This document shows, piece after piece, positions 7,000 to 60,522 of a stretch of 64,000 nucleotides of DNA (the stretch's first letter is position 1; each line of letters begins with the position of its first letter). The notes under the pieces are model-generated. The model saw only the letters and a program-made list of their open reading frames with translations. It was not told the origin of the DNA and did no database searches. The stretch lies in sequence record LR745206.1. One strand, written 5' to 3'. Made by a program: the position numbers and the translations under genes.

Positions 7000-7026
7000 A
7001 AAACCCAACTTAATCAGTTGGGTTTT
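7000..7026. terminator. bidirectional intrinsic terminator
   Basis: AAAACCCAACT-TAATC-AGTTGGGTTTT between convergent genes. Confidence 0.75.
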
Positions 7027-7237
7027 CAATTTTAAATATATTTTCGATTTTTCGTTTCCTTATTAGATTTGTAGTTCTAACAAATCCATAATAACTATTA
7101 TTAACCATTTTTGTTGCATATCTACTCTTCATTGATAATGAATTGAAGCTACTTGATAATGTTGAAATACTTTCACTAACAACATAGGGCATCCAAACTA
7201 GACCAGCTTCCAATTTATTTGATTTCTTTCCCAACAT
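7010..7237 (-). CDS. small protein: major capsid C-terminal-like fragment plus RxxKIxxIF tag
   Basis: GKKSNKLEAGLVWMPYV..MKSRYA resembles gp23-family GYKGPNEMDAGIYYAPYV..FKTRYG; ends IRKRKIENIF. Confidence 0.7.
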   Translation of the reverse strand: MLGKKSNKLEAGLVWMPYVVSESISTLSSSFNSLSMKSRYATKMVNNSYYGFVRTTNLIRKRKIENIFKIENPTD

Positions 7238-7367
7238 TGAATATTTTTTCTATTTTTTCTTTCCTTATAAGTGGTCTGAACCAAAAATTTGGCATCCATA
7301 CGTCCCTACCATAGTTATTATTGGATGGTCCGAAAACTTTAATATTTGGATCTGGAGCTACAAACAT
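7215..7367 (-). CDS. 50-aa tagged micro-protein not in ORF track
   Basis: hand translation MFVAPDPNIKVFGPSNNNYGRDVWMPNFWFRPLIRKEKIEKIFNVGKEIK; fills the gap between co-oriented genes. Confidence 0.65.
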   Translation of the reverse strand: MFVAPDPNIKVFGPSNNNYGRDVWMPNFWFRPLIRKEKIEKIFNVGKEIK

Positions 7368-7388
7368 AACATTTATATAATATTTTTA

Positions 7389-7706
7389 TTATTTGTTTTC
7401 AGTGTATAAGTATTTTCTACCTTCATCATTATAATCCATTAAGTTATTTATGATAGTATCCGCTTTATCAATAGTATCATCTAAATTTTTCTTTATAACT
7501 TGTAAAGCAGCGATAGAATCATCTATTTGATCATTACCTTTTTTTGAATTATTCTTATAGTTATTTAATTCATTTATATATGATTCAGCCATCTTACTTT
7601 TATCTTCTATTGTGGAAGAGAAATCTCTTAGATCTTCAATTATTTCACCAACTCTTTCAGTAGAAATATTATTCTCATCATTTTCATATAGTCTTTTAAT
7701 TTTCAT
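7389..7706 (-). CDS. coiled-coil small protein, putative head-packaged
   Basis: MKIKRLYE start; heptad-rich. Confidence 0.65.
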   Translation of the reverse strand: MKIKRLYENDENNISTERVGEIIEDLRDFSSTIEDKSKMAESYINELNNYKNNSKKGNDQIDDSIAALQVIKKNLDDTIDKADTIINNLMDYNDEGRKYLYTENK

Positions 7707-7727
7707 ATGGATATGTAATTTTTATAT

Positions 7728-7743
7728 TTAATATATATATTAA
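7728..7743. promoter_or_regulatory. palindromic bidirectional late promoter
   Basis: perfect 16-bp palindrome TTAATATATATATTAA holding TTAATATATA on both strands between divergent starts 7706 and 7747. Confidence 0.6.
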
Positions 7744-7746
7744 GTT

Positions 7747-8424
7747 ATGAAAAGGAAGAATAAGCTAATTTTAGAATTCACGGAATTTAATCTACAAAGG
7801 TTTAATAGTGATTCAGTTGTTCCAGCAGCACCAAATGTTAATAATCCATCTTTATCAACAGATGGTATTAATAGACATGAAGATGGTATTAGACAAGCGA
7901 TGTCTAGAATTAATGATATTCTTTATAATTTAAAGGGTACAAATTCATATTCTCAATTGAGAAGTAAGTTAGCCCTAGAGGACCAGGATATACAAAGTCT
8001 TAAAATACTAAGAATGGTTAAATCAAATGTTAGTTATGATGTTTATTTAACATTAGTGGTTGATGGTGAGACATATTGGGGTAAAATTATTAACATAACT
8101 GGTATGGATCCTAAATTCGAATCAGAAATGTTTAAGGATTTTGATCTATATCAACCAAAAGAATGGGTTATTAAAATGAAAGGTCTTGTTATTAAGACTA
8201 TTAAGGCTTGGTTAAAACCTAAACCAGGTAATTATCAGTTATTGAATGATGAAGTTATATGTTATTCTGTTGATACTGGTAAACAATTAAGAATGGAAAA
8301 AGGTATTGAAGTTGAATTAATACGTTCTCATGATGATAAAATAATTGTTAAACATGAAGGTGAATATTATAATTTAGTTGGTGATAACTTTGTCTATTTC
8401 AATTGGTGGTTTGAATTAGTTTAA
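7747..8424 (+). CDS. hypothetical protein
   Basis: 225-aa ORF; N-terminus LILEFTEF resembles the targeting motif. Confidence 0.65.
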   Translation: MKRKNKLILEFTEFNLQRFNSDSVVPAAPNVNNPSLSTDGINRHEDGIRQAMSRINDILYNLKGTNSYSQLRSKLALEDQDIQSLKILRMVKSNVSYDVYLTLVVDGETYWGKIINITGMDPKFESEMFKDFDLYQPKEWVIKMKGLVIKTIKAWLKPKPGNYQLLNDEVICYSVDTGKQLRMEKGIEVELIRSHDDKIIVKHEGEYYNLVGDNFVYFNWWFELV

Positions 8425-8699
8425 ATATCCTTTATACACTTACCTATCAATTCACTTTTTTCTTCTAAAGTTATAATAATAGGGCTTATTTTATCAATAT
8501 CTAATAATTTACTATTTAAAGATACTTTTATTTCTGAATCAGTAGATGTGTTGTTTATATTAATATCATCAATCGTATATTGATTACCTGATTCATCTTC
8601 TACTATTATAGTTGTTTTAGAAAAAATATCATCCTCAAATATAAAATTCATCATCAGTATTTTACAATTGTCTATTTGTGATTTAGTAAATTTTGCCAT
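8421..8699 (-). CDS. hypothetical protein
   Basis: likely start MAKFTKSQ at 8699; the longer ORF overlaps the upstream gene. Confidence 0.55.
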   Translation of the reverse strand: MAKFTKSQIDNCKILMMNFIFEDDIFSKTTIIVEDESGNQYTIDDININNTSTDSEIKVSLNSKLLDIDKISPIIITLEEKSELIGKCIKDI

Positions 8700-8715
8700 A
8701 GTTAATAATAATTTT

Positions 8716-10227
8716 TTACCATAAAAATACGTTTCCGATCGCAGCATTTCTACCAGAGTTGAAATTGTAAATTCTTATTTGTGTTGATGTTAGTAGTGTT
8801 ATGTTTGGGTTAATATTACCATCTTGACATTGAACAACAGCAATCGGTATATATCCTAGATTATGGTTAAATGTTGATCCAGATGAACTAGCTATATTAA
8901 ATGATGTTGTGTATCTATAATCTAATCCATTTTGTATTTCTACACCACCTCTACCAGTTATTGTATTAGCGTTGAATCCACCTATTGTTAGTCTATTACT
9001 ACTAGTTATTGGTGTTTTATCAAGAGTAATGTATGTACCACCGCTATCATAAACGCTAAAGTAGAATCTAGAGCTACCAGCAATACCTCCACCTAATAAA
9101 GAATAAAACTCGAAATCGGTAGCTGCTCCTGTTCTCATTTGGAACCTTTTCTTACCTCCTGTTACAAATGATAAATTATTACTTGATCCAGTATCTCTAA
9201 ATATACCTGTATTTGATGCTCCTATTTTCAATGATAAATCAGATATAATACCTGAGTTTTGTAAAAAAACAGTACCGGATGAGCTAACACTAATATCATA
9301 TCCTGATTGTAGAGCCATTGTGGTTGCTGTGTATAAAATCTTAACTAATCCAGAATTAGAAAAAGCCATTACGTTAGTACCAAGTCTATAAAAACCCATG
9401 TTGCTTTGACTTTGAAATGATATTGATGGTTGTGATCCAGATCCATTACCTGCTAAGAAATAAGGAGCTTTAAGTACAGCACTTGATCTTATTTCTCCAG
9501 TATCTAATACTAATTGTGGTGATGTTGGTACAGCTGGATTAGCATTTGGGCTATTTTCTAATATAAGTTGTCTTCCATCTCCACCATCATATGAATAAAT
9601 TCTTGAGGGTGCTCCAAAATTTTTGAAATTAAGAACAGTAACTATACCTGCTACACCACCAACTCCTGGAAGTGTACTACCACCTGAATTACCTGGTGGT
9701 GTATCAACAGTCATGTTGAATGTATAAGTTGGTTGTGTTACATTACTAGTTAATATACTACCAACTTGTGCTGTATTTTGTAATCTTGTTAGTGTTAATG
9801 TTCCAGAAGTTATATTTGTAGCATTTATATTAGTTATATTACTACCTATTCCATAAAAACCACCAGCTCCAGATGATCTTATATCACCATTCACGGTTAA
9901 CTTTTTATCAGGAGTTATTGTTGATATACCAACATTTGTTGCATTATCAAATATTAAACTGTTTTGTATAACATTTCCAGGCGCTACGAATTTAGGTACA
10001 TAATTTGGTGTTCCTGATCCAGAAACACTACTTGCGGATTCTGTTGAGAATGTTGTTCCAGTCCAAACATATGGTATACTAACATTTAAATCCCAAACAC
10101 GCATTCCTGGGTATTTATATGGTAAATTATCTTTATTTGTATAAAATTGACCAGGTCCAACAACAAGTCTATTATCAATAGCCTTAGCTATGTTTACCTC
10201 AAAATTATCTATTATTTGTATTGCCAT
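8716..10227 (-). CDS. tail fibre-like structural protein
   Basis: Gly/Ser/Thr-rich beta-strand composition; SGSGTPNYVPKF..NSLIFDNATNVGISTITPDKKLTVNGDI and ITSGTL repeats typical of fibres. Confidence 0.6.
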   Translation of the reverse strand: MAIQIIDNFEVNIAKAIDNRLVVGPGQFYTNKDNLPYKYPGMRVWDLNVSIPYVWTGTTFSTESASSVSGSGTPNYVPKFVAPGNVIQNSLIFDNATNVGISTITPDKKLTVNGDIRSSGAGGFYGIGSNITNINATNITSGTLTLTRLQNTAQVGSILTSNVTQPTYTFNMTVDTPPGNSGGSTLPGVGGVAGIVTVLNFKNFGAPSRIYSYDGGDGRQLILENSPNANPAVPTSPQLVLDTGEIRSSAVLKAPYFLAGNGSGSQPSISFQSQSNMGFYRLGTNVMAFSNSGLVKILYTATTMALQSGYDISVSSSGTVFLQNSGIISDLSLKIGASNTGIFRDTGSSNNLSFVTGGKKRFQMRTGAATDFEFYSLLGGGIAGSSRFYFSVYDSGGTYITLDKTPITSSNRLTIGGFNANTITGRGGVEIQNGLDYRYTTSFNIASSSGSTFNHNLGYIPIAVVQCQDGNINPNITLLTSTQIRIYNFNSGRNAAIGNVFLW

Positions 10228-10245
10228 AATCTATATATAAAATTT

Positions 10246-11748: not shown

Positions 11749-11750
11749 AA

Positions 11751-13328: not shown

Positions 13329-13382
13329 CTAATTGATCACTTTTTTAGTATATATTAAAAAGTGGTTCCAACTATTAATAAA

Positions 13383-13408
13383 AAATCCGATAATTACTTA
13401 TCGGATTT
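13383..13408 (-). terminator. intrinsic terminator
   Basis: AAATCCGATAA-TTAC-TTATCGGATTT hairpin with a T-tract on the minus strand. Confidence 0.7.
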
Positions 13409-13501
13409 AAAAATATTTTTTATTTTATCTTTTCTTATATCGTTCTTATAGATTGGTTCATATGAAAATTTTGGTAGACTTGTGAGTAATGGTAGTGGCA
13501 T
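13394..13501 (-). CDS. 35-aa tagged micro-protein not in ORF track
   Basis: MPLPLLTSLPKFSYEPIYKNDIRKDKIKNIFKSDK; TAATG stop/start overlap with upstream gene. Confidence 0.6.
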   Translation of the reverse strand: MPLPLLTSLPKFSYEPIYKNDIRKDKIKNIFKSDK

Positions 13502-17282: not shown

Positions 17283-17897
17283 ATGAAATACGAAAAACAA
17301 AATATTTACTTTATATCAGACTTCCACGTTGGTCACAAAAACGTATTGAAGTTTGATGGTCGTCCTTTTCAGGACACAGAGGAAATGCACACTGAGTTAA
17401 TCAAGAGATGGAACTCAGTTATTGGTGATGATGATATTGTTTATTACTTAGGTGATTTAGCATTTTGTCGAGATGAACTAGCGAAATGGTTCGCTTATTC
17501 ACTAAAAGGTAAAATACATTTCATAAAAGGAAACCATGACAAAATGAAAACTTTACGTAAGTTTGGTCGATGGGAGGAAATTTATGAATATGGTACAGAA
17601 ATTTTTATCAAGGATGATGATTTGAAAAGTGCTCGAGGAATGCACGGATATCAACAAATTATAATGTCACACTACCCAATCTTGAGTTGGAACAGAGTAC
17701 ACTATGGTAGTTGGCATTTACATGGTCATTGTCATGGTAGCTTGATGAAAAGTAACCAAGATTATTACAAAAGAAAGGTGATGGATGTTGGGTGTAACGT
17801 AATTGATTATACTCCAATTTCTTATGAGGAAGTAAAAGGTGTGATGGTTAAAAAAGGAATCATTTCTGTTGATCATCATGGTGATGCTGATATGTAA
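17283..17897 (+). CDS. calcineurin-like metallophosphoesterase
   Basis: SDFHVGH, LGD, GNHD, SHYP, HGHCH motifs. Confidence 0.9.
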   Translation: MKYEKQNIYFISDFHVGHKNVLKFDGRPFQDTEEMHTELIKRWNSVIGDDDIVYYLGDLAFCRDELAKWFAYSLKGKIHFIKGNHDKMKTLRKFGRWEEIYEYGTEIFIKDDDLKSARGMHGYQQIIMSHYPILSWNRVHYGSWHLHGHCHGSLMKSNQDYYKRKVMDVGCNVIDYTPISYEEVKGVMVKKGIISVDHHGDADM

Positions 17898-18055
17898 TGG
17901 ATAAAAGTTGGATAAAAATATCAATTAATAGCTACTACGGTACTTATAATTCTGGTAAATCAAACTTTGATATGAAACCACTTTGGGTTAAATATCGTAG
18001 TGGTAAAAGGAAGTCAAAGATAAAAAATATATGGAAGATAGATGGGATGTTATAA
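17897..18055 (+). CDS. 52-aa tagged micro-protein with PolB motif-B-like segment, not in ORF track
   Basis: MDKSWIKISINSYYGTYNSGKSNFDMKPLWVKYRSGKRKSKIKNIWKIDGML; TAATG coupling. Confidence 0.6.
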   Translation: MDKSWIKISINSYYGTYNSGKSNFDMKPLWVKYRSGKRKSKIKNIWKIDGML

Positions 18056-18363
18056 ATGTTGTTTGTATAAAGGGATATAAAACATTGAAAGTTGGTTCCT
18101 CTTATCAGATAAAGGGTCGTGGAAATCTAACATATAATGCTGATCCAGAAGTTGGTGGTAAAAAAGGTCAAGGATATTGTATAGAGGATGGTATGTATGG
18201 GTCTTATAGTGGTAGAACCGATTGGTACCGATTGCCTTATAATGAAAGGATTAAGTGGTATTATTTTACCGAAAAAGAAATGGGTGATTACTTTATAACA
18301 GATAATGAAAATCATATAATATATTTAAGAGATAGAAAAATTAATAGTATAATAAATGATTGA
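18031..18363 (+). CDS. tagged hypothetical protein
   Basis: ends YLRDRKINSIIND. Confidence 0.7.
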   Translation: MEDRWDVINVVCIKGYKTLKVGSSYQIKGRGNLTYNADPEVGGKKGQGYCIEDGMYGSYSGRTDWYRLPYNERIKWYYFTEKEMGDYFITDNENHIIYLRDRKINSIIND

Positions 18364-19371: not shown

Positions 19372-19949
19372 ATAGATCGGATTTAATTAAGATAATTAGA
19401 AGGTCACAAACCTTTATATCAATTATGCTTTTCTTTGGTGTTTTTTTCTTTTCCTGGGATGTTACTGGTTTTGAATTAACCGAAATACAACTATCTAAGT
19501 GGGGAGAAACTGGTTCTATTGTAGAATCAATATGGAACTCGGCTGTTTGTTTATTGTCTATATCAATATTGTTCAATTCTATATATTATCTAAAAAATAA
19601 TAATAGAATTAAATATAAAACAACATCATATGTTTTATTCTCACTGATTTCGATTTGTCTATTTGTTATAGGTTTTTTTAATGTTAATCATAACTTTATA
19701 CATAATCTAGCTGCTTATTTATACTTTTTCATATATCCATTTTCAATTTTCATCTTTGCTCACTTAAACAGAAAGACTTTACATTATAAGGATTGGATAC
19801 AACATGTTGTTATATCGATATCCATGATGGTTTTACCGCTTATTTTTATATCTTTGTTTAATGGTATGGCTTTGGCTGAAATGACACACATTTTATTTGT
19901 TGTTATTTGGAATTTAAAAATAGCATTTAAGTCAATAAATGATGAATGA
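19368..19949 (+). CDS. multi-pass membrane protein (DUF998-like)
   Basis: about five hydrophobic helices; FIHNLAA segment. Confidence 0.6.
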   Translation: MNRSDLIKIIRRSQTFISIMLFFGVFFFSWDVTGFELTEIQLSKWGETGSIVESIWNSAVCLLSISILFNSIYYLKNNNRIKYKTTSYVLFSLISICLFVIGFFNVNHNFIHNLAAYLYFFIYPFSIFIFAHLNRKTLHYKDWIQHVVISISMMVLPLIFISLFNGMALAEMTHILFVVIWNLKIAFKSINDE

Positions 19950-20292
19950 GAATGAATTCATAGATTGGATAAAGGAATTGGGATTTTCTAAAACTTGGGA
20001 AACATATGATGGTGAGTATTCAATAAAACCTGGTGGTGATGGTATATTTGATCCTAAGATTTATTTTACTACTTCTTATGAAGAATCAGAAATTAAAATT
20101 GGTATACATTATGCTAAAATGAATGGTACGATGTCATATGGATCTAATATAGGATATTTCAATATTAGTCAAATAGGTGAATTTGAAAAAATAATTATAG
20201 TGCATAAACTTATTGAATATTTTGATGAAGTTCCAATTGGATTCAAAAAGTATTTAAGAGATTCTAAAATTAAAGACATTTTAGGGTATTAA
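19939..20292 (+). CDS. tagged hypothetical protein
   Basis: ends YLRDSKIKDILGY. Confidence 0.7.
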   Translation: MMNENEFIDWIKELGFSKTWETYDGEYSIKPGGDGIFDPKIYFTTSYEESEIKIGIHYAKMNGTMSYGSNIGYFNISQIGEFEKIIIVHKLIEYFDEVPIGFKKYLRDSKIKDILGY

Positions 20293-20829: not shown

Positions 20830-21189
20830 ATGCAAGAAAAAACCGAATTAGACTTAAATAACCCTATCTTTGCCGTTTATGTAAATGTTGGTGGTTTATC
20901 TAGACAGAGAGCTGAGGAAACAATCCAACACTTATCTAAAACTATGGATTGTCATAGTAATGTAACTATGTGGTTTTTCGGATGTGGTAATCTTGGTGAA
21001 AATCAAGAGACAAAAGTGGAGTGTGTTTATGATGGGATGTTGAGAAATAGAAATTCAGAATTAGTTGACTTAATAAAAGAAATAAATACAAGAGTTGATA
21101 TTTTATCAAATTCTAAAGATTTTGAAGATTTTAAATTAAATGTGAGAAATTGGAGATTGGGAGAATTACTAAAAAATGGCGATAACTAA
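20830..21189 (+). CDS. portal clip-like fragment plus tag
   Basis: YVNVGGLSRQRAEETIQHLSKTM versus T4 gp20 [23 protein letters not shown]; ends VRNWRLGELL. Confidence 0.7.
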   Translation: MQEKTELDLNNPIFAVYVNVGGLSRQRAEETIQHLSKTMDCHSNVTMWFFGCGNLGENQETKVECVYDGMLRNRNSELVDLIKEINTRVDILSNSKDFEDFKLNVRNWRLGELLKNGDN

Positions 21190-21556
21190 GAACAAAATAC
21201 AATTATTAGATAATATTCTATCTGTTGAAAAAGAGATGGAAATTGACTATTATTCCTATTGGGATAGTTACGGGTATGATGATTATTATGAAAATGATTA
21301 TTACGAAGATGATAGAGATCCTTGTTGGGGCTATGTTGAATCAATAGAACCTAGTTATGATTTGATAACCAAAGGTCGTGGTAGATTTACATACCAAAAC
21401 CATGCTAGAGTTCTTGGTAAGATGATAGATATGGATACTATTTATTCTAGAGAAGTGTTGAGAGAGAGAAAAATAGATCAAATTCTTGGATTATTGGCAC
21501 CAACTTATATACCGAAAGCAACTATTGGTGATTTTTTTCCAAAAAATAATAATTAA
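21176..21556 (+). CDS. Tyr/Asp-rich tagged protein
   Basis: YDDYYENDYYEDD tract; LRERKIDQILG. Confidence 0.7.
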   Translation: MAITKNKIQLLDNILSVEKEMEIDYYSYWDSYGYDDYYENDYYEDDRDPCWGYVESIEPSYDLITKGRGRFTYQNHARVLGKMIDMDTIYSREVLRERKIDQILGLLAPTYIPKATIGDFFPKNNN

Positions 21557-22988: not shown

Positions 22989-23058
22989 GGTTGGGTGACC
23001 GAGAGATAGGTGGAGACTCGCAAAGTCTTTTACGGTGGTTCAAATCCATCCCCAACCT
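22989..23058 (+). tRNA. tRNA-Cys(GCA), non-canonical
   Basis: acceptor GGTTGGG/CCCAACC, D stem ACC/GGT, anticodon stem GAGAC/GTCTT with loop TCGCAAA, T arm GGTGG-TTCAAAT-CCATC, U73 discriminator, no encoded CCA. Confidence 0.85.
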
Positions 23059-23071
23059 CTAATTTATATTT

Positions 23072-43406: not shown

Positions 43407-43880
43407 ATGACTCAAAGTTCTAAAGAAGATATTTTTAAAAAATGGGCACCTATTATAGAATCTATGGGTGTTACTGGATCAAAAGCAGATTGGATGTCTC
43501 ATTATGCTGAAATGCACTCTATCAATGAGAATAATATACAAATATCATCAACACAATCTACTTCTAATTTTCCAAATTTGTTACCAATCGCTAAAAAGAT
43601 TGCAGCTCAAACAGTTGGACTAAATTTAGTAGCTGTTAAACCAATTGGTGGTAATTCAACTGATGAGTTAGAAAGAATAAAAAGTGAGATTAAATCTGAA
43701 AACCGCGATAGAAAAATCGATTCTATTACAGATGATAAAGAATTTGAGGAAATGAAGGTTGAGGATCATCCAGACTATGAAACTGGTTTACCTAGTGGTA
43801 AATTATTTTACATGGATTATCAATATGGATCTACACCAACACATAAGAAGACAAGAAGAAGTAAAAAGAAGAAGAAATGA
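43407..43880 (+). CDS. major capsid N-terminal-like fragment with internal tag
   Basis: MTQSSKEDIFKKWAPIIE versus T4 gp23 MTIKTKAELLNKWKPLLE; LVAVKPIGG..PSGKLFYMDYQYG; NRDRKIDSI inserted. Confidence 0.75.
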   Translation: MTQSSKEDIFKKWAPIIESMGVTGSKADWMSHYAEMHSINENNIQISSTQSTSNFPNLLPIAKKIAAQTVGLNLVAVKPIGGNSTDELERIKSEIKSENRDRKIDSITDDKEFEEMKVEDHPDYETGLPSGKLFYMDYQYGSTPTHKKTRRSKKKKK

Positions 43881-44131
43881 AGAAACTTAAAATGCAAAAA
43901 GATTATTGGTTTCCTAGTCCAGATTATGTTAATAGATTTGGTCGTAAAAGAAGTATTGCTAAAATATTTGACCTTGAGTATGACGAATCTGATTTAGTAA
44001 ATTCCTCACAAATTCATTGGAGTAGTACCACTGCTCAACCAAGAATGAAATTTGTAATACCTATTGGTGATATGAAAGATAAACCAAGTATTGCTAAAAG
44101 AATCAAGGATTTGATAAAAAAATTCAAATAA
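43877..44131 (+). CDS. portal-like fragments flanking a tag
   Basis: QKDYWFPS, GRKRSIAKIF, RMKFVIPIGDM..KDLIKKFK. Confidence 0.6.
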   Translation: MKKLKMQKDYWFPSPDYVNRFGRKRSIAKIFDLEYDESDLVNSSQIHWSSTTAQPRMKFVIPIGDMKDKPSIAKRIKDLIKKFK

Positions 44132-44490: not shown

Positions 44491-44529
44491 ACTTATTTAG
44501 ATAAATAAATATAAAAAATAAAAGATATA

Positions 44530-44802
44530 ATGGGATCAATGAAAGAAATTAGTATTAGAGAATATATTTCTAATATAGACTTCAAACGAGATGATTGGAA
44601 ACTTTCAGTTATGAAAGAAGATATGAGAAAATTCTTAGGTGAAGAACCAGGTATCGATATCATTTACAAAAAAGATGTAATGATAAACGAAACAACACAA
44701 GAAGCTCAAGAATATGTTGATATCAATAAAGTTCAAATAGTTTTTTTTGATACTGATGAAAAATTTAAGAAACTAGAGTTTCTGATAGATGATAATGTTT
44801 AA
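44530..44802 (+). CDS. hypothetical protein
   Basis: 90-aa ORF in operon. Confidence 0.6.
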   Translation: MGSMKEISIREYISNIDFKRDDWKLSVMKEDMRKFLGEEPGIDIIYKKDVMINETTQEAQEYVDINKVQIVFFDTDEKFKKLEFLIDDNV

Positions 44803-45016
44803 AATGGACTTAAAAAATTACTACCTAGATCTTAAAAAAGTTTCTGAATTGGAATTAGAAGAAGATAGAAAAATTATACATGACTATTATAGGGATATGT
44901 TGAGTTATAATTATGAAAAAAGAGAAGAAATCGCAATTTCTATGTTTAATACACTATATAGTGGTGACTATTTAAAAGAAGTTCGTGATGAAAAAATTGA
45001 TCAAATACTTTCTTAA
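44789..45016 (+). CDS. tagged hypothetical protein
   Basis: ends VRDEKIDQILS; start may be a few codons later. Confidence 0.65.
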   Translation: MIMFKMDLKNYYLDLKKVSELELEEDRKIIHDYYRDMLSYNYEKREEIAISMFNTLYSGDYLKEVRDEKIDQILS

Positions 45017-45333
45017 TGGAAATAAAAGCTGATATATTAGATTACTTGGGTAAAATAGATGATGGTATTATTGTTTTACTTTCATTATCATATGATGGTG
45101 TGTATTATGAGGGAACACTATATTATAAGGATAAGTTAGTTGCTTTAACACCAGATGAAGTTCTTGAAGAGAAATTGGGATCTGTTATAGAAGATTGGGA
45201 AGGTTATAATGATTTAATGTTAGAAATACTTAAAAAAGTTGTTCCTTATGATGAGATGATTACTAGGGTTGATGATATTGATATGAATCAATATGGTATT
45301 GAACTAGGTAATAGTGACGAATCAATCGATTAA
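45016..45333 (+). CDS. acidic hypothetical protein
   Basis: 105-aa ORF, TAATG coupling. Confidence 0.6.
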   Translation: MEIKADILDYLGKIDDGIIVLLSLSYDGVYYEGTLYYKDKLVALTPDEVLEEKLGSVIEDWEGYNDLMLEILKKVVPYDEMITRVDDIDMNQYGIELGNSDESID

Positions 45334-45663
45334 TTCATTAAGTTTAATATTTCGATTAACCATTTTAAATTCATCAATCAAATCTCCCCAATATTTAAAC
45401 TTAATTCTATACTTACAACTCTTACCTAATTTAATATTAGACCAAGATTTTCCATCAGTTTTAAAATCCTTACTTATTGGAAATTGATATAAGTACATAA
45501 ACCAATAATTTCTATCTCTACTTTTTAAGAAATCTTTATTGTCTTTCAGATGATATGTATAATAAGCTTTTATAGCTTCATCATAATAATCACATATATA
45601 GTGTATTTCTGGCAATCCTTGTCCTCTTTGACAGGACATAATATAAATAAATTTCTCTTCCAT
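45322..45663 (-). CDS. tagged hypothetical protein
   Basis: ends VNRNIKLNELID. Confidence 0.65.
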   Translation of the reverse strand: MEEKFIYIMSCQRGQGLPEIHYICDYYDEAIKAYYTYHLKDNKDFLKSRDRNYWFMYLYQFPISKDFKTDGKSWSNIKLGKSCKYRIKFKYWGDLIDEFKMVNRNIKLNELID

Positions 45664-46394: not shown

Positions 46395-48092
46395 ATGCTT
46401 ATAAGTGAAATAGGAATTAGAGGATATAAATCATTTGGAAATAACGAACAAATATTAAAACTAAATACCGAAAGAGGTGAACTATTACTTCTTGTTGGTA
46501 ACAATGGTAATGGTAAATCTTCATTACTAGAATCTTTTGAATACGTATTATACGGTAAAGTTAAATCAGGTAAAACAAAAAAATGGCATAAATTATCCAC
46601 GTTACCTAATAGGATAAATGGTGAGATGTTAAATCGAATAAAATTTGTTGCTAGTGGAACTGATGTTGAGATTAAAAGAGGTATATCACCTGGTATATTG
46701 GAGTTAACTGAAAATGGTCTTGTTAATGAAAGAGCTGGTAAATCCAACTTAGATGATCATATTGAAAAATATATTGGATTGGATATCGAAACATTCAAAT
46801 CTTTTATATCAATGTCTATAAATGATTTCAAAAACTTTATATCATTAACAAATGAGGAGAAAAAATTATTACTTGATAAGCTATTTAACCTAGAAGTCAT
46901 TAATATTCTAAACGGTATATTAAAAGACATCAATAAAAATAATAAAATTAGATTAGCCTCTTTGGATTCTGAGATAAGAACACTCGAAGAATCAATTGAT
47001 TCTATAAAAAGATCTATTGCTAATGCTATCGAAAGAGAAAAGGAAAATCTTCAACAAGAAATAGATGTTCTTGTAGAAGATATGAATTCTAAAAAAGAAG
47101 ATTATGCAGCATTAAAAGACAAGGTTGAGAAGATAAAGGAAAAAGAGAAAATATTATCCGATGAAATGGATAATGAAAAGAAACAATATATCAATACACA
47201 GAATGATATCAGAAATGTACAAAAGGAGATAGATCTTTATGATTCTGGTAAATGTCCAACTTGTTCAACTGATTTTAAATCAACACATTTTGCTGATTTA
47301 AGAACATCATTAATTGAAAAGAAACAAGGATATGAAAATATTAAAATTGAAATTGAAGAAAATATTAAATCTGTTAAATCTAAACAAGTTAAATTAAAGG
47401 AAATTGGTGATGGTACCACTTCCTCTTTTACGGATTTGAGTTATCTATTGAGAAACTATAAAACTAAGATAGATGAGTTATCAAGAAAGAAGAGTAAAGA
47501 AAATGGTAAAGAATCAGTTAATGTTCAAGAGTTTCAAAAAACAATTGAAGAATTAGAGGGTAAGAAATCATTTAGTCATGATAATATTTCTATCAGTAAA
47601 GAGAAAGAACTTTATTATAAAGAGTTAAATAGAATTTTTGGTGAAGATGGTGTTAAGAAAGCAATCATTGCTGGTATTATAAAACCAATAAACCACTTCA
47701 TAAGAGAAAATATTAAAACGATGGGTTTACCTTTTGGTGTTCAATTAGATGAGACTTTCACTGCTGAGATTAAAATGTTGGGAACACCTATTGAACACGA
47801 TTCATTATCAACTGGTGAGACAAAGAAGATTAATATAGCTATATTAATAGCTTACTTGAAATTAATTAGAACTAAAAAACACATCAATATACTCTTCTTA
47901 GATGAGGTCTTTGCCTCAATTGATATCGAGGGTATAGATTCTATATTGGGTCTCTTAAAATCATTTGCAAATGACTACAATATCAATATATTTGTTGTTC
48001 ACCACGCAATTCTTAGTCAGGAGATGTTTGATAGAATTATAAAAATAAACAAAGATGTTTTTTCATCAATAGAGGAAGTAGAATATGAATGA
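46395..48092 (+). CDS. SbcC/Rad50/T4 gp46-like recombination ATPase
   Basis: GNNGNGKS Walker A, coiled coil with CPTC hook, LSTGE signature, LFLDE Walker B. Confidence 0.9.
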   Translation: MLISEIGIRGYKSFGNNEQILKLNTERGELLLLVGNNGNGKSSLLESFEYVLYGKVKSGKTKKWHKLSTLPNRINGEMLNRIKFVASGTDVEIKRGISPGILELTENGLVNERAGKSNLDDHIEKYIGLDIETFKSFISMSINDFKNFISLTNEEKKLLLDKLFNLEVINILNGILKDINKNNKIRLASLDSEIRTLEESIDSIKRSIANAIEREKENLQQEIDVLVEDMNSKKEDYAALKDKVEKIKEKEKILSDEMDNEKKQYINTQNDIRNVQKEIDLYDSGKCPTCSTDFKSTHFADLRTSLIEKKQGYENIKIEIEENIKSVKSKQVKLKEIGDGTTSSFTDLSYLLRNYKTKIDELSRKKSKENGKESVNVQEFQKTIEELEGKKSFSHDNISISKEKELYYKELNRIFGEDGVKKAIIAGIIKPINHFIRENIKTMGLPFGVQLDETFTAEIKMLGTPIEHDSLSTGETKKINIAILIAYLKLIRTKKHINILFLDEVFASIDIEGIDSILGLLKSFANDYNINIFVVHHAILSQEMFDRIIKINKDVFSSIEEVEYE

Positions 48093-48384
48093 GATAGACA
48101 ATTTATTATGTGATTTGTTTGAGATTAGGAATAGTAAACATTCTGTTATCAAAAAACAAAAGTATGAGAAAGCTGCTGAATTGAGAGATTCTGAGAGACA
48201 ATTAGAAGTTAAAATCTATAAGATTCTCTATTCGGAAGAATTATATGATTGGGAAAAATTATCAGAAGGTATAAGTAAGTATTGCTTTGACACATATGGT
48301 TTTATATATGATAATAAAGATTATGATTCTAATTTTAGAGAAACAATTCGAGAAATAAAATTAAAACAACTGGGTATAAAATAA
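48085..48384 (+). CDS. UVR-domain (ClpC middle domain-like) protein plus tag
   Basis: KHSVIKKQKYEKAAELRDSERQL; ends IREIKLKQLGIK. Confidence 0.7.
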   Translation: MNEIDNLLCDLFEIRNSKHSVIKKQKYEKAAELRDSERQLEVKIYKILYSEELYDWEKLSEGISKYCFDTYGFIYDNKDYDSNFRETIREIKLKQLGIK

Positions 48385-48394: not shown

Positions 48395-48664
48395 ATGGCA
48401 AATCAGAAATTATCAACAAAACAACTTTCATCTACTGGTATTCCATCAGGTAGTGTTTTAATATCGGATGGGACTGGTAATGTTACTTGGAATGATACCA
48501 TATCAATGAATTCTGATATGATAGACTTTTTTGAGTTGGTATTAGTAGCACTTGGATATGATATAACTTATGATGAGTTTAGTAAGATGAGTGGTGAAGA
48601 GAAAAAAGCAATCATTCGTGATATAAAAATTAAAAGGGTATTAGATGTTAATAATAAAGATTAA
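48395..48664 (+). CDS. tail-fibre-repeat-like fragment plus tag
   Basis: GSVLISDGTGNVTW; ends IRDIKIKRVL. Confidence 0.6.
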   Translation: MANQKLSTKQLSSTGIPSGSVLISDGTGNVTWNDTISMNSDMIDFFELVLVALGYDITYDEFSKMSGEEKKAIIRDIKIKRVLDVNNKD

Positions 48665-53663: not shown

Positions 53664-53696
53664 TATTTATATATTATTTAATATTATATTCATATC

Positions 53697-58472: not shown

Positions 58473-58544
58473 TAATAGTTTTATTAACTTTTCAGTATAT
58501 ATAAATATGTTAATAGTTTCTATATGTTATTAAACATTTTTTCA

Positions 58545-58552
58545 TATATTTG
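58545..58552 (+). promoter_or_regulatory. Bacteroidota-type -7 element
   Basis: TATATTTG just upstream of ATG 58563. Confidence 0.55.
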
Positions 58553-58562
58553 TATAATTAAT

Positions 58563-59297
58563 ATGAGGAAAAAGATTTTAGTATTTACGGGAGCTGGTGT
58601 ATCCGCTGAAAGTGGTGTAGAAACTTTCAGAGATACTGGTGGTTTATGGTGTAATCATAAAATAGAAGATGTTGCTACTCCTAGTGGATGGAAAAAAAAT
58701 AGACAAATAGTATTAGACTTCTATAATCAAAGAAGAAGTCAGTTAGAGACTGTTGAGCCGAATAAAGCACATAAACTAATCGCTGAGTTAGAAGAGTATT
58801 TTGATGTAACCATTGTTACTCAGAATGTAGATAATTTACACGAAAGAGCTGGATCTACAAATGTTATACATTTACATGGTGAATTAACTAAGGTTAGGGG
58901 ATGTATGTATGATCATAAAACATCACCATTTGATGTCATTTATGATATTGGGTATAAACCTACTAAAATAGGTGATATGTGTGAAAAAACAGGATCACAA
59001 TTAAGACCACATATTGTTTGGTTTGGTGAATCTCTCTCAACTTTAGATATAGATAATGCGGTTATAGCAGCGGAACAAGCTAATGTTTGTATTGTTGTTG
59101 GTACTTCTATGCAAGTTTCTCCAGCAAATACTATTCCATTTCTAACTAAAGAAAGTTCATTGATTTATTATGTTGATCCGGGTGAGGAATTTGATGTTCC
59201 TAGAATTAGAAAAGAATTTTTCACACACTTTCAAGAAGGTGCTGTTAGTGGCATGGAAAAAGTTAAAAATGAATTAATTGATTTATTATTGATATGA
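58563..59297 (+). CDS. cobB: Sir2/CobB NAD-dependent deacylase
   Basis: TGAGVSAESG..TFRD, TQNVD.LHERAG, HLHG, RPHIVWFGE, VGTS. Confidence 0.9.
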   Translation: MRKKILVFTGAGVSAESGVETFRDTGGLWCNHKIEDVATPSGWKKNRQIVLDFYNQRRSQLETVEPNKAHKLIAELEEYFDVTIVTQNVDNLHERAGSTNVIHLHGELTKVRGCMYDHKTSPFDVIYDIGYKPTKIGDMCEKTGSQLRPHIVWFGESLSTLDIDNAVIAAEQANVCIVVGTSMQVSPANTIPFLTKESSLIYYVDPGEEFDVPRIRKEFFTHFQEGAVSGMEKVKNELIDLLLI

Positions 59298-59524
59298 AAG
59301 AATATAAAGTAATTAACTGTGGTGATTATTATGTTGTTAGATATGATAATTTCAACCATGGATATGGTAATGATAGAAAATATAGAACATATGAACAGGC
59401 TATGTCTGATATTTATAGATATTATAAAGATATAAAAACTGTGGATTATGAGTCAAAGTCGGAGCGAGAAGCTCGTATTCTATCCGAAAAGAGAAATAGT
59501 GTAATTGATAAAATTTTAGGATAA
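59294..59524 (+). CDS. tagged hypothetical protein
   Basis: ends KRNSVIDKILG. Confidence 0.65.
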   Translation: MKEYKVINCGDYYVVRYDNFNHGYGNDRKYRTYEQAMSDIYRYYKDIKTVDYESKSEREARILSEKRNSVIDKILG

Positions 59525-60078
59525 TGCTTTGGTATCATTGGGTCATTGGTTTTTCTATAGCGTTATCCCTTTTATCGGTTATATTATCTATACCATCAAT
59601 TATAACTATTTATAGAATTGGTTTAAAAGACTATGTTAGAAACATAAAACTACTTTATAATCTTAGAAAAAGGCTAAGTCTATGTTATCAACTAAATACC
59701 AATAGAACTTATAATTATCAAGTTAATGGAAGTTCTGTAAAAACCACAAATCAGATAGACATTGATTATTATTTTCCAATATATCTTAATGATAAAAATG
59801 TTGTTATTGTTAATAAGAGAGGTAAAGGTTTGTGGTATAACCTAATAATAAATGATGCGAGTTATGATGGTAAGGATTGGGTAACTAATATTATTGAAAT
59901 AAAAACATCTACTTGTATGCTAACACAAATTCTTAATGATAGATTTCAATCAAAATTAGATAAATTTACAAAGAACAAAATTTTATTAGAGGATATTAAA
60001 GATTTAAATGAATTAATTAATAGTGAGATAGTGAGTATTAGAAGAGATAGTAAATTAAATTTATTAATAAATGAATAG
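59524..60078 (+). CDS. membrane-anchored tagged protein
   Basis: N-terminal hydrophobic helix; ends RRDSKLNLLINE. Confidence 0.65.
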   Translation: MLWYHWVIGFSIALSLLSVILSIPSIITIYRIGLKDYVRNIKLLYNLRKRLSLCYQLNTNRTYNYQVNGSSVKTTNQIDIDYYFPIYLNDKNVVIVNKRGKGLWYNLIINDASYDGKDWVTNIIEIKTSTCMLTQILNDRFQSKLDKFTKNKILLEDIKDLNELINSEIVSIRRDSKLNLLINE

Positions 60079-60196
60079 TTATAATTGGTTAATGGGTAAC
60101 TTACAAGCTGCTTTAAGAGCAGCCAGACCTAATATGAAATCAAAGGTGAGGAAGAATAAAATAAAAAAACTATTATATGAACTTATCGGAAATTAG
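60071..60196 (+). CDS. 41-aa tagged micro-protein not in ORF track
   Basis: MNSYNWLMGNLQAALRAARPNMKSKVRKNKIKKLLYELIGN; fills operon gap. Confidence 0.6.
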   Translation: MNSYNWLMGNLQAALRAARPNMKSKVRKNKIKKLLYELIGN

Positions 60197-60380
60197 AACT
60201 TATGATTATGATAGAAAATCACCGAATGTGTTTTATATTTTAGATTATCCAAATTTGATAAAAATTAATGAGTTAACTAAAGAAAAGCGTGATATTATAA
60301 ATAAAATGAGTAATAACATTAGGTTTTTAAGAATACGTATGAATCGTAGAAATAAAATAAATAGAATTTTTGAAAAATAA
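60177..60380 (+). CDS. tagged hypothetical protein
   Basis: ends NRRNKINRIFEK. Confidence 0.65.
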   Translation: MNLSEIRTYDYDRKSPNVFYILDYPNLIKINELTKEKRDIINKMSNNIRFLRIRMNRRNKINRIFEK

Positions 60381-60522
60381 ACAAATCATATTACTTAAAG
60401 CTAGACAAACTGGTAAATCTTATTCTACATTGCATGAAATGATTAGGAGATACAAGGAAGTTGATACCGAAATGAGAAGAGCATTTAGAATACAAAGTGT
60501 AAAAAAGATATTTAATATATAA
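60370..60522 (+). CDS. 50-aa terminase Walker-A-like fragment plus degenerate tag, not in ORF track
   Basis: TTG start; MKNKQIILLKARQTGKSYSTLHEMIRRYKEVDTEMRRAFRIQSVKKIFNI. Confidence 0.6.
   Translation: MKNKQIILLKARQTGKSYSTLHEMIRRYKEVDTEMRRAFRIQSVKKIFNI

What the first reader, a model, noticed from the sequence alone, without database searches (positions are those of the whole stretch)
7010..60522. Candidate novel system: library of small bait-plus-handle proteins made of hallmark protein fragments fused to a shared RxxKIxxIL tag
Seen: about 19 small ORFs share a basic amphipathic motif, usually near the C-terminus. 7010 IRKRKIENIF; 7215 IRKEKIEKIF; 13394 IRKDKIKNIF; 17897 KRKSKIKNIW; 18031 LRDRKINSII; 19939 LRDSKIKDIL; 20830 VRNWRLGELL; 21176 LRERKIDQIL; 43407 NRDRKIDSIT; 43877 GRKRSIAKIF; 44789 VRDEKIDQIL; 45322 NRNIKLNELI; 48085 IREIKLKQLG; 48395 IRDIKIKRVL; 59294 KRNSVIDKIL; 59524 RRDSKLNLLI; 60071 VRKNKIKKLL; 60177 NRRNKINRIF; 60370 FRIQSVKKIF. 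Codons differ, so conservation is at protein level. At least eight carry a short piece resembling a conserved surface of a core protein: MCP N, MCP C, portal twice, TerL Walker A, PolB motif B, tail-fibre repeat, ClpC UVR helix. Established: capsid, portal and terminase are triggers of bacterial pattern-recognition defences (Avs receptors sense terminase and portal; CapRel and Lit sense major capsid protein). Inference: the variable part is a decoy or dominant-negative bait, against host sensors or competing phages, and the tag is a common handle docking on one partner such as a protease, membrane site or scaffold. I know of no described system with this architecture.
Basis: partly seen in the sequence, partly recalled or inferred. 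Interest (0 to 1): 0.95.

Follow-up and report, generated by a model that had tools for sequence, protein, structure and literature searches.

The report
Shared C-terminal tag on small phage proteins
About one in seven predicted proteins of this 635-kb bacteriophage, all of them small and mostly unrelated to each other, end in the same 9-13-residue Arg/Lys/Ile/Leu helix, which looks like a common docking or addressing tag whose receptor is still unknown and which I could not find described.

Summary
The window is positions 248001-312000 of LR745206.1, a 634,780-bp uncultured "Mahaphage" predicted to infect Bacteroidetes.

**The tag is real.** A scoring matrix trained outside the window finds it at the C-terminus of 13 of 80 window genes, against 0.08 expected. 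Genome-wide it marks 114 (pattern) to 143 (matrix) of about 1002 predicted proteins. No protein over 260 aa carries it.
- Conservation is at protein level: synonymous codon use at tag positions matches the genome, and Arg is never replaced by Lys.
- It lies in a predicted terminal helix.
- It comes in three flavours.
- It recurs in relatives (LR756502.1, LR756504.1, many IMG/VR contigs). It was absent from sampled parts of more distant Mahaphages and from bacterial genomes.

**"Hallmark fragments" is only partly right.** Capsid-protein pieces (43407, 7010, probably 7215) and a ClpC/UVR-like motif (48085) are genuine. Portal, terminase, polymerase and tail-fibre likenesses found no support. Over 100 tagged proteins resemble nothing.

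**Best reading:** a shared docking or addressing helix on a fast-turning-over set of small accessory proteins. The receptor is unidentified. Loading into the capsid, as with T4 internal proteins, is my leading guess. The decoy idea is untested.

The parts
7010..7237 (-). 75-aa ORF. It copies the MCP C-terminal segment (own MCP residues 494-539) and carries a flavour-B tag (RKRKIENIF, DNA 7034-7060). The last codons overlap a terminator stem.
   Evidence: Pfam Gp23 E 2.2e-4, 21.2 bits, below the 24.4 cut-off; BLASTP E 1e-7; MCP HMM E 3.6e-4; five metagenomic homologues, 52-65% identical, same length and same tail. AF2 pLDDT 59, only residues 47-67 helical.
6999..7027 (-). Terminator-like hairpin (12 pairs plus a T run) directly after, and overlapping, the end of ORF 7010.
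7215..7367 (-). 50-aa ORF with a flavour-B tag (RKEKIEKIF, DNA 7239-7265). The body shares a short stretch with ORF 7010, so it may be a second MCP C-terminal piece (weak).
   Evidence: 21.2 bits; E 0.063 to ORF 7010.
13394..13501 (-). 35-aa ORF with a flavour-B tag (RKDKIKNIF, DNA 13409-13435), followed by a terminator-like hairpin at 13383-13408.
   Evidence: (20.0 bits).
17897..18055 (+). 52-aa ORF with a flavour-B-like tag (RKSKIKNIW, DNA 18008-18034). The PolB motif-B likeness is not supported.
   Evidence: (8.0 bits).
18031..18363 (+). 110-aa ORFan with a flavour-A tag (RDRKINSII, DNA 18328-18354). No orthologue in LR756502.1.
   Evidence: (24.8 bits).
19939..20292 (+). 117-aa ORFan with a flavour-A tag (RDSKIKDIL, DNA 20257-20283).
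   Evidence: 23.3 bits.
20830..21189 (+). 119-aa protein with a flavour-A variant tag (RNWRLGELL, DNA 21145-21171). It belongs to a 49-member family in which both tag arginines are invariant.
   Evidence: R106 and R109 invariant, W108 at least 90%; AF2 pLDDT 80, tag inside the last helix, residues 98-116; pN/pS 0.37.
21176..21556 (+). 126-aa ORFan with the motif (RERKIDQIL, DNA 21461-21487) 22 residues before the end.
43407..43880 (+). 157-aa protein. The N-terminal part copies the phage MCP's residues 8-118. An internal tag-like motif follows (RDRKIDSIT, DNA 43704-43730), then a basic tail. It is probably a head-internal protein.
   Evidence: 41% identity, E 7e-22; orthologue r43773 keeps the motif; E 8e-22.
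43877..44131 (+). 84-aa ORF with RKRSIAKIF at residues 23-31 (DNA 43943-43969). Doubtful member: the motif is internal and Ser stands at the Lys position.
44789..45016 (+). 75-aa ORFan with a flavour-A tag (RDEKIDQIL, DNA 44984-45010), one residue before the stop.
   Evidence: 24.3 bits.
45322..45663 (-). 113-aa ORFan with a flavour-A tag (RNIKLNELI, DNA 45328-45354).
   Evidence: 18.9 bits.
48085..48384 (+). 99-aa protein. Residues 19-41 match the UVR motif and the M-domain region of the phage's ClpC-like protein. It ends in a flavour-C tag (REIKLKQLG + IK, DNA 48349-48375).
   Evidence: PF02151, 22.6 bits against 21.5; E 5.3e-6 to L008:12324-14429 residues 299-333; orthologue keeps a tag.
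48395..48664 (+). 89-aa ORFan with a flavour-A tag (RDIKIKRVL, DNA 48617-48643). The tail-fibre likeness is not supported.
   Evidence: (25.3 bits).
59294..59524 (+). 76-aa ORF with a tag variant (RNSVIDKIL, DNA 59492-59518), Val at the Lys position.
   Evidence: 14.6 bits.
59524..60078 (+). 184-aa protein with a hydrophobic N-terminal segment and a flavour-A tag (RDSKLNLLI, DNA 60043-60069).
   Evidence: 18.3 bits.
60071..60196 (+). 41-aa ORF with tag RKNKIKKLL (DNA 60149-60175).
   Evidence: 20.0 bits.
60177..60380 (+). 67-aa ORF with a flavour-B tag (RRNKINRIF, DNA 60345-60371).
   Evidence: 12.9 bits.
60370..60522 (+). 50-aa TTG-start ORF with RIQSVKKIF (DNA 60487-60513). Doubtful member. 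The TerL Walker-A likeness is not supported.

Best explanation
The feature is a genuine, clade-specific peptide module. Its core is nine residues: Arg, then D/E/K/N, any, Lys, I/L, any, any, I/L, then L/I/F. Weaker preferences sit four residues before and one after. It lies in the last alpha-helix, 0-9 residues from the C-terminus, of roughly 130-140 small proteins (33-256 aa) of this 635-kb Bacteroidetes-type huge phage.

What carries it. The bodies in front of the tag are mostly unrelated ORFans. They turn over quickly between related phages and sit as tightly packed, often overlapping, small genes between conserved genes.

Shown: it exists, it is conserved at protein level, it is helical, it is restricted to small proteins, it has three flavours, and it is confined to one clade.

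Inferred mechanism. The tag is a portable docking or addressing helix. Any small protein that acquires it is recognised by one conserved receptor, which reads a strictly required Arg, a Lys and a three-residue hydrophobic patch. So a large, changing repertoire of accessory proteins is sent to the same place or the same fate.

Leading guess for the destination: loading into the assembling head, so that the proteins travel with the DNA. This would be a C-terminal, much enlarged counterpart of the capsid-targeting sequence on the hypervariable internal proteins of T4. I give the docking-handle core about 0.55 and the capsid destination about 0.3.

The subset with pieces of MCP, of the scaffold-like protein or of the ClpC M-domain fits proteins that associate with their parent assemblies. 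That association is not shown.
For: Real and not chance:
- 143 of 1002 genes score at least 10 bits, against 1.2 expected.
- Control in bacterial genomes: 4 of 120 DNA-pattern matches sit at an ORF end, against 69 of 124 in viral contigs.

Protein level, not RNA:
- Codon shares equal the genome's.
- In a six-frame count the motif is in frame at a C-terminus 87 times. It lies out of frame or non-coding within 60 nt upstream of a start only 4 times.
- Forty-six of 132 tagged genes have no same-strand gene starting within 30 nt downstream, and two in the window end at terminators.

Specific recognition: with position 0 left free it is Arg in 87 of 93 cases and never Lys. Position 3 is Lys 87, Arg 8.

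Selection: the tag arginines are invariant in a 49-member family of 45-86% identity. The tag is kept in 4 orthologue pairs. pN/pS is 0.37-0.54.

Helix: (residues 98-116, model pLDDT 80).

Modular:
- No conservation upstream of position -4.
- Bodies are unrelated.
- Most tagged window genes lack an orthologue in the 76%-MCP-identity relative, which has its own tagged genes at matching places.

Small proteins only: none of the proteins over 260 aa (about 200) carries it.

Clade distribution.

Head link:
- The head module is T4-like: a gp23-family MCP with a repeat-rich, acidic scaffold-like gene just upstream.
- Four of the 7 MCP-like pieces in the genome carry a C-terminal tag and a fifth an internal one, against an 11-14% base rate.
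- A scaffold-repeat mini-protein carries a tag.
- Two conserved tagged proteins lie within about 25 kb downstream of the MCP gene.
- Giant-phage heads are reported to hold more than 50 gene products, many of them ejected (abstract of PMC10052503).
Against: - No receptor was identified. No tool here can co-fold a peptide with a partner.
- Against the capsid destination: tagged genes are not concentrated near the head genes (5 of 64 genes in the 200-250 kb bin, against 19 of 113 in the first 50 kb).
- In the window they are co-operonic with nucleotide and DNA-metabolism genes.
- Flavour-A tags make up a larger share of small genes in units preceded by the host-type upstream motif (23 of 121) than in units with the motif found upstream of the MCP gene (13 of 200). 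That classification is crude.
- The scaffold-like protein itself has no tag.
- Other probable head-internal proteins share the MCP's N-terminal region and have no tag.
- About 140 cargo species would be unprecedented.
- No flexible linker precedes the tag, unlike typical cargo-loading peptides.
- Tagged genes overlap the next gene twice as often as other small genes. A translational role is therefore not fully excluded.
Confidence: 0.5

Rival explanations
1. Each tagged protein is a bait made from a surface of a hallmark protein. It acts as a decoy for host sensors or as a dominant-negative against competing phages. The tag is the common handle.
For: A real subset fits the architecture.
- MCP C-terminal piece plus tag: 7010 family.
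- Two other flavour-B mini-proteins hit Pfam Gp23. One has an orthologue in LR756502.1, and the listed weak tblastn hits that carry an annotation fall mostly on capsid-protein genes.
- Scaffold repeats plus tag.
- ClpC M-domain/UVR motif plus tag: 48085.
- The 7010 body is predicted to be disordered on its own, as expected for a piece that folds only on a partner.
Against: - Over 100 of 114 tagged proteins resemble no hallmark or any other protein.
- The portal, TerL, PolB and tail-fibre likenesses are not recovered. The one portal hit outside the window has E 0.048.
- 43407 shares its MCP-like N-terminus with untagged proteins and looks like a head-internal protein.
- No defence sensor or competitor target is in evidence.
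Confidence: 0.15
2. The tag is a degradation signal or an adaptor-docking peptide for an AAA+ machine, for example the phage's own ClpC-like unfoldase. This would give timed removal of small early proteins or delivery of their bound targets.
For: - The phage encodes a 701-aa ClpC homologue that lacks the N-terminal domain (PDB ClpC E 8e-239, aligned to residues 145-803).
- 48085 joins a ClpC M-domain-like motif to a tag.
- The tag sits at or near the C-terminus. A larger share of small genes carries it in units with the host-type upstream motif.
Against: - ClpC-like genes occur in the 735-kb relative (44% identity) and in many jumbo phages. In that relative I found no tag in 100 kb.
- The distance to the C-terminus varies from 0 to 9 residues, and several true-looking copies are internal.
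- No ClpP was identified, though it was not searched for.
- The motif is more strictly defined than known degrons (my own knowledge).
Confidence: 0.15
3. The motif is imposed by the nucleotide sequence or by translation: a ribosome-loading element for the overlapping downstream gene, or a nascent peptide that favours termination-reinitiation.
For: - Tagged genes overlap the next same-strand gene in 70 of 132 cases, against 169 of 673 for other small genes (odds ratio 3.4).
- The next ATG begins 0-9 nt after the tag in 38 of 58 cases.
- Flavour C ends GGN ATA TGA, which holds the next start codon, in 12 of 18 cases.
- Modest excess of ATA at position 7 and TTA at position 8.
Against: - Arg, Leu, Lys and Asp codon shares match the genome.
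- The motif is almost never found upstream of start codons unless it is in frame in an upstream gene (4 against 58).
- Forty-six of 132 tagged genes have no same-strand gene starting within 30 nt downstream, and two in the window end at terminators.
- True-looking internal copies exist.
- The distance to the stop is not fixed.
Confidence: 0.05
4. There is no common receptor. The helix is a self-association or stabilising element, or a membrane-binding amphipathic helix, reused because it is easy to evolve in an AT-rich genome.
For: - The tag is contiguous with the preceding helix and has no linker.
- Its composition (K, I, N, L, D) is cheap in a 29% G+C genome.
Against: - Shuffled C-termini of the same composition almost never score.
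- Arg is never replaced by Lys. This argues against simple charge or membrane binding.
- There are two sharply correlated flavours (odds ratio 138).
- It is absent from AT-rich bacterial genomes and from sampled parts of related AT-rich huge phages.
Confidence: 0.1

Closest known systems
Capsid-targeting sequence (CTS) of the T4 internal proteins (IPI, IPII, IPIII, Alt). From my own knowledge.
   Same: A short terminal peptide is the only thing shared by small, hypervariable, dispensable proteins of a phage with a gp23-type head. It addresses them to one destination.
   Different: The T4 signal is N-terminal, about 10 residues, and is cut off by the prohead protease. It marks a handful of proteins. 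Here the signal is C-terminal and helical, marks about 130-140 proteins, and no cleavage site or virion location is shown.
C-terminal coat-binding helices of scaffolding proteins (P22; 80-alpha and the SaPI CpmB mimic) and encapsulin cargo-loading peptides. From my own knowledge.
   Same: A short C-terminal, basic and hydrophobic peptide docks a protein on the inside of an HK97-fold shell. A satellite protein can copy the peptide to use the same site.
   Different: The phage's scaffold-like protein has no tag. No flexible linker precedes the tag. Tagged genes are scattered, not next to the shell gene.
Families of viral substrate adaptors with a variable binding part and a shared docking module (for example poxvirus ankyrin/PRANC proteins), and adaptor tails that dock on Clp unfoldases. 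From my own knowledge.
   Same: Many proteins share the plan 'variable body plus common handle', and the phage encodes a Clp-type unfoldase.
   Different: Those handles are folded domains or defined tails with a known receptor. Here the handle is a 9-13-residue helix with no known receptor, and the unfoldase gene is not specific to tag-bearing phages.
UVR motif (Pfam PF02151)
   Same: A helical motif with Leu/Ile, Arg and Asp followed by spaced hydrophobic residues. One tagged protein (48085) holds a true UVR motif upstream of its tag.
   Different: The tags themselves do not match PF02151 in any of the proteins scanned. The hydrophobic spacing after Arg-Asp is one residue longer because of the conserved Lys.

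Membership tests
T4-type capsid-targeting sequence | Located at the N-terminus and removed by the prohead protease at a defined cleavage motif | tested here: not met
   The tag is C-terminal, 0-9 residues from the end. No cleavage motif was looked for or seen.
T4-type capsid-targeting sequence | Carried by small, hypervariable, otherwise unrelated proteins of a phage with a gp23-type head | tested here: met
T4-type capsid-targeting sequence | Bearers are found inside the virion | not testable with these tools
   No proteome of particles is available for this uncultured phage.
Encapsulin-type cargo-loading peptide | C-terminal peptide preceded by a flexible Gly/Pro/Ala-rich linker | tested here: not met
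   The C-terminal position is met. No compositional signal appears at positions -30 to -5, and the AF2 model shows a continuous helix.
Encapsulin-type cargo-loading peptide | Cargo genes lie next to the shell gene | tested here: not met
   Tagged genes are spread over the whole genome.
Scaffolding-protein coat-binding helix | The phage's own scaffolding protein ends in the motif | tested here: not met
   The scaffold-like protein (L005:226-1869, just upstream of the MCP gene) has no tag.
UVR motif PF02151 (as identity of the tag) | Match to the Pfam profile above its cut-off | tested here: not met
   Only residues 19-41 of ORF 48085, which are not its tag, pass (22.6 against 21.5 bits). No tag region matched.
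Sliding-clamp-binding C-terminal motif | Carried by replication and repair enzymes (polymerase, ligase, flap nuclease) | tested here: not met
   No protein over 260 aa carries it. The 5'-3' exonuclease-like protein (L009:26015-26989, 324 aa) has none; the ligase-like ORF in the window did not come up in the window scans.
MinD/FtsA-type membrane-targeting amphipathic helix | Generic basic and hydrophobic helix in which Lys and Arg are interchangeable | tested here: not met
   Arg at position 0 in 87 of 93 cases, Lys in none.
Gp23 major capsid protein family PF07068 (for the bodies of 43407 and 7010, as fragments) | Significant similarity to MCPs over the matching segment | tested here: met
   43407: E 7e-22 to own MCP residues 8-118. 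7010: E 1e-7 to residues 494-539; its Pfam score of 21.2 bits is below the 24.4 cut-off, but 4 of 5 homologues carry a precomputed PF07068 hit. Neither is a full MCP.
   Pfam and PHROG scans, phmmer against all genome proteins, PDB sequence searches.

The most novel reading that the evidence does not exclude
A phage-encoded 'bait-and-handle' platform. More than 130 small proteins each join a variable binding part to one shared C-terminal helix. In some, the binding part is a fragment cut from a self-assembling protein: capsid, scaffold, or a Clp unfoldase M-domain. The helix plugs into a single receptor, which could be the procapsid or an unfoldase/protease. The phage could then address, load or dispose of many different targets through one port. 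This would be a bacterial-virus counterpart of the adaptor families of large eukaryotic viruses.
Probability: 0.2. Interest if true: 0.9.

Novelty: new variant of a known kind. Interest (0 to 1): 0.8.

Why it matters
Most genes of huge phages are small ORFans with no handle for study. One short peptide that marks about one in seven predicted proteins of a 635-kb phage, and hundreds more in related metagenomic contigs, sorts that dark matter into a single functional class. It also points to one receptor that would explain all of them at once.

- If the tag addresses proteins to the capsid, these phages would carry an unusually large protein payload into the cell.
- If it docks on an unfoldase or a host hub, it is a new way of building many effectors from one module.

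Either way it gives a simple sequence rule for finding such proteins. It also offers a natural example of a portable peptide tag. The capsid-, scaffold- and ClpC-derived mini-proteins are rare cases of conserved genes made from a piece of a larger protein.

Tried and rejected
**Rejected explanations**
- Composition artefact of Lys/Ile-rich ends: rejected by shuffles and by the bacterial-genome control.
- Promoter or ribosome-loading element read through by chance: rejected by codon shares and the six-frame count.
- Exons, introns or homing-endonuclease footprints. Rfam found nothing in the window. Neighbours of the mini-genes are ordinary genes such as NusG, dCMP deaminase and Dam methylase.
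- One paralogous family: rejected, the bodies are unrelated.
- Clamp-binding motif, membrane helix, or UVR as the identity of the tag: see the membership tests.

**Searches that led nowhere**
- The tag profile against PDB sequences gave nothing significant. The best chance matches were a kinesin helix and others at E 0.7-4.
- Fold search with the ORF 20830 model gave no match (TM at most 0.3).
- The largest tagged proteins gave almost nothing: one NUMOD4 and one weak Gp23 in Pfam, nothing in PHROGs.
- PHROG scan of the ten largest window proteins gave nothing.
- Literature searches found no description of such a tag.
- Phylogenetic profiling of the ClpC-like gene was not discriminating.
- The upstream-motif classification of transcription units was too crude to time the tagged genes.

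**Limits**
- Genes were called by a greedy ATG-ORF rule, so counts are approximate.
- Distant relatives were only sampled: 100 kb each of LR756501.1 and LR756500.1, and 50 kb of PTm1.

- These were clamp-binding and FtsZ-tail peptides, a ClpX recognition tail, PolB motifs, a T4 late-promoter box and a giant-virus promoter box.
- I generalised the k-mers found to the Bacteroidetes -7 box pattern from memory and used that pattern.
- Consensus lines printed by the alignment tool were not used.

Full report
**Source and setting**

The window is identical to LR745206.1 positions 248001-312000. LR745206.1 is an unannotated 634,780-bp uncultured phage. It is one of the four largest genomes of Al-Shayeb et al. 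2020, placed in the Mahaphage clade with a predicted Bacteroidetes host (PMC7162821).

- G+C content is about 29%.
- The window holds one tRNA-Cys and no Rfam match.
- Recognisable genes are a PLP-dependent enzyme, a phosphoesterase, a DprA-like protein, ligase-like and NUDIX proteins, and an SbcC-like ATPase.
- The large proteins (up to 1916 aa) match nothing in Pfam or PHROGs.

**Checking the observation**

All 19 quoted strings are present.

- In 80 greedy ATG-ORF genes of the window, the pattern R..[KRS][ILV]..[ILV][ILFVW] occurs 16 times. Thirteen of these end within 10 residues of the stop.
- I read the rest of the genome in 12 separate pieces and never joined them.
- Of about 1002 genes, the pattern occurs 141 times, 114 of them at the C-terminus.
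- A matrix trained outside the window finds 13 of 80 window genes at 10 bits or more. Shuffling the same C-termini gives 0.08 expected.
- Genome-wide, 143 genes pass, against 1.2 expected.
- No protein over 260 aa carries the tag. About 30% of the 75-100-aa proteins do.
- No column upstream of position -4 is conserved, so the tag is a short terminal module.

**Protein or nucleic acid?**

- Synonymous codon shares at the Arg, Asp, Lys, Ile, Leu and Phe positions equal genome-wide shares. The only departure is a modest excess of ATA and TTA at positions 7 and 8.
- Counted in all six frames regardless of gene calls, a stricter form of the peptide motif is in frame at a C-terminus 87 times and in frame internally 13 times.
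- It occurs elsewhere 22 times. Only 4 of those lie within 60 nt upstream of a start codon.
- Forty-six of 132 tagged genes have no same-strand gene starting within 30 nt downstream. Two in the window end at strong terminator-like hairpins.
- With position 0 left free it is Arg in 87 of 93 cases and never Lys. Position 3 is Lys 87, Arg 8.
- In the 49-member family of ORF 20830 (45-86% identity), both tag arginines are invariant.
- pN/pS for tagged orthologue pairs is 0.37-0.54, with synonymous sites near saturation.
- AlphaFold2 places the tag inside the last helix, residues 98-116, of a model with pLDDT 80.

**Three flavours**

| Flavour | Pattern | Count | Notes |
|---|---|---|---|
| A | Arg-(D/E/N)-x-Lys-(I/L)-x-x-(I/L)-(L/I/V) | 97 | median 105 aa |
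| B | Arg-(K/R)-x-Lys-Ile-x-x-Ile-(F/W) | 17 | median 52 aa |
| C | ends ...(I/L)-Gly-(I/V) at the very C-terminus | 18 | 12 end GGN ATA TGA, which holds the next gene's ATG |

Positions +1 and +8 are tightly linked between flavours A and B (odds ratio 138, p = 9e-13).

**Distribution**

- The close relative LR756502.1 (MCP 76% identical) carries the tag: 8 C-terminal hits in 72 genes of the syntenic 50 kb.
- Most tagged window genes have no orthologue there. That relative has its own tagged genes at matching positions. Four orthologous pairs keep the tag.
- LR756504.1 (MCP 53% identical) has a variant with Tyr at -1 and Lys at +1.
- I found none in 100 kb each of LR756501.1 (735 kb) and LR756500.1 (462 kb), nor in 50 kb of Tenacibaculum phage PTm1.
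Sixty-nine of 124 matches lie at the end of an ORF with at least 30 residues upstream.
- Those loci hold 168 tagged genes among 1713. The two contigs I checked are relatives of this phage.
- The same pattern in 120 loci of bacterial and archaeal genomes lies at such an ORF end only 4 times.

**The bodies**

- With the tag removed, almost none of the 114 proteins matches any other protein of the genome at E < 1e-3.
- The largest tagged proteins give nearly nothing: one NUMOD4 and one weak Gp23 hit in Pfam and no PHROG hit.
- The exceptions are pieces of the phage's own assembly proteins.
- The real MCP is L005:1952-3634 (560 aa, Pfam Gp23 E 2e-26, untagged).

MCP-like pieces found in six-frame ORFs by a clade MCP profile:

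| Piece | E-value | Tag |
|---|---|---|
| window 43407 (internal motif, kept in its orthologue) | 8e-22 | internal |
| 243-aa paralogue of the MCP C-terminal third | 4e-13 | flavour A |
| 166-aa protein | 6e-10 | none |
| window 7010 | 4e-4 | flavour B |
| 84-aa protein | 0.015 | none |
| 137-aa protein | 0.04 | flavour A |
| 62-aa protein | 0.3 | flavour B |

- The 62-aa protein is also hit by Pfam Gp23 at E 5e-4. It has a 64%-identical orthologue in LR756502.1, and the listed weak tblastn hits that carry an annotation fall mostly on capsid-protein genes.
- ORF 7010 has five metagenomic homologues of the same length. All begin at the equivalent of MCP residue about 494 and end with the same flavour-B tail.
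- On its own the 7010 body is predicted to be disordered.
- One flavour-B mini-protein is three repeats of the repeat-rich, acidic scaffold-like protein encoded just upstream of the MCP gene.
- ORF 48085 holds a UVR motif (Pfam, 22.6 bits against 21.5). This motif matches residues 299-333 of a 701-aa ClpC homologue of the phage (E 5e-6).
- That homologue aligns to ClpC residues 145-803, so it lacks the N-terminal domain.
A flavour-B mini-protein outside the window gives only Portal_T4 at E 0.048.

**Gene organisation**

- Tagged genes overlap the next same-strand gene in 70 of 132 cases, against 169 of 673 for other small genes.
- The next start codon usually begins 0-9 nt after the tag.
- Two upstream motifs are enriched 10-40 nt before start codons. 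One is an ATATATA-type box (39% of upstream regions against 2.6% of random windows), also present before the MCP gene.
- The other is a TA..TTTG box (21% against 6%) that fits a Bacteroidetes host.
- Flavour-A tags are about three times as frequent among small genes in units with the second box. This classification is crude.

**Interpretation**

The data show a portable, specifically recognised C-terminal helix carried by a large and fast-changing set of small accessory proteins.

Unrelated proteins would not all keep such a motif unless it gave each of them the same generic service. I therefore infer a common receptor that sends them to one place or one fate. Nothing here identifies the receptor.

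My leading guess, at about 0.3, is loading into the procapsid.
- For: the T4-like head, the precedent of the T4 capsid-targeting sequence, the size limit, and the excess of capsid- and scaffold-derived tagged proteins.
- Against: the scattered, enzyme-operon context, the untagged scaffold, and the sheer number of tagged proteins.

A dock on the ClpC-like unfoldase or on a host hub is a serious rival. A translational role is unlikely but not excluded.

I found no description of this tag in the literature searched.

One pattern, the Bacteroidetes -7 box generalised from the k-mers, was used in scripts.

Noticed in passing
L008:12324-14429 (LR745206.1 423224-425329), outside the window: The phage encodes a 701-aa ClpC-type AAA+ unfoldase. 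It aligns to ClpC residues 145-803, so it lacks the N-terminal adaptor-binding domain. Homologues occur in LR756502.1, LR756508.1, LR756501.1/03.1 and many jumbo phages.
   Followed up: partly
L002 around 43566-43820 (genome 93266-93520), L010 around 44484-44984 (genome 554784-555284), and window 43407-43880: Three small proteins share the Gly/Ala/Ser-rich N-terminal region of the MCP (MCP residues about 30-118). This looks like a common pro-region or targeting region of head-internal proteins. Two of the three have no C-terminal tag.
   Followed up: partly
Whole genome; in the window for example upstream of gene starts: Two motifs are enriched 10-40 nt upstream of start codons. An ATATATA-type box occurs in 39% of upstream regions against 2.6% of random windows and is present before the MCP gene. 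A TA..TTTG box occurs in 21% against 6% and fits Bacteroidetes promoters, so it supports the predicted host.
   Followed up: partly
Flavour-C genes, for example window 48085-48384 and L007:14471-15209: Twelve of 18 flavour-C genes end GGN ATA TGA. The last two residues and the stop therefore also encode a GG-rich stretch and the ATG of the next gene. This is dual coding at the gene junction.
   Followed up: yes
Window 6999-7027 and 13383-13408 (minus strand): Strong terminator-like hairpins overlap the last codons of ORFs 7010 and 13394. In the 7010 family the residues encoded by the stem are conserved too.
   Followed up: partly
Window 8716-13328 (minus strand): Three consecutive ORFs of about 500 aa (8716-10227, 10246-11748, 11751-13328) have no Pfam or PHROG match. 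They have no counterpart in the syntenic 50 kb of LR756502.1, so they may be a lineage-specific insertion or an expansion.
   Followed up: no
Window 31524-37274 (+) and 53697-58472 (-): The 1916-aa protein has an orthologue in LR756502.1 (57-61% identity). The 1591-aa protein matches that same orthologue at several places at 24-30% identity, so the two giants share a repeated module. Neither matches any family.
   Followed up: no
Window 1113-3038 (minus strand): A 641-aa protein has a sub-threshold ankyrin-repeat match (Pfam Ank_2, E 3e-5, 25 bits against a 27.3 cut-off).
   Followed up: no
Genome-wide internal motif copies, for example L006:46216-46623, L002:21755-22183, L007:15206-15640: About a dozen proteins carry a true-looking tag 16-56 residues from their N-terminus, followed by a further domain of about 110 aa. 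These may be fusions of a tiny tagged ORF with the next gene.
   Followed up: no
L048:8793-9557 (IMG/VR contig): A 254-aa tagged protein of a related contig has a NUMOD4 motif, the DNA-binding module of homing endonucleases (Pfam E 3e-7). It is one of the very few tagged proteins with a recognisable domain.
   Followed up: no
Window 22989-23059: A tRNA-Cys (GCA) gene sits inside the array of small tagged genes and nucleotide-metabolism genes.
   Followed up: no
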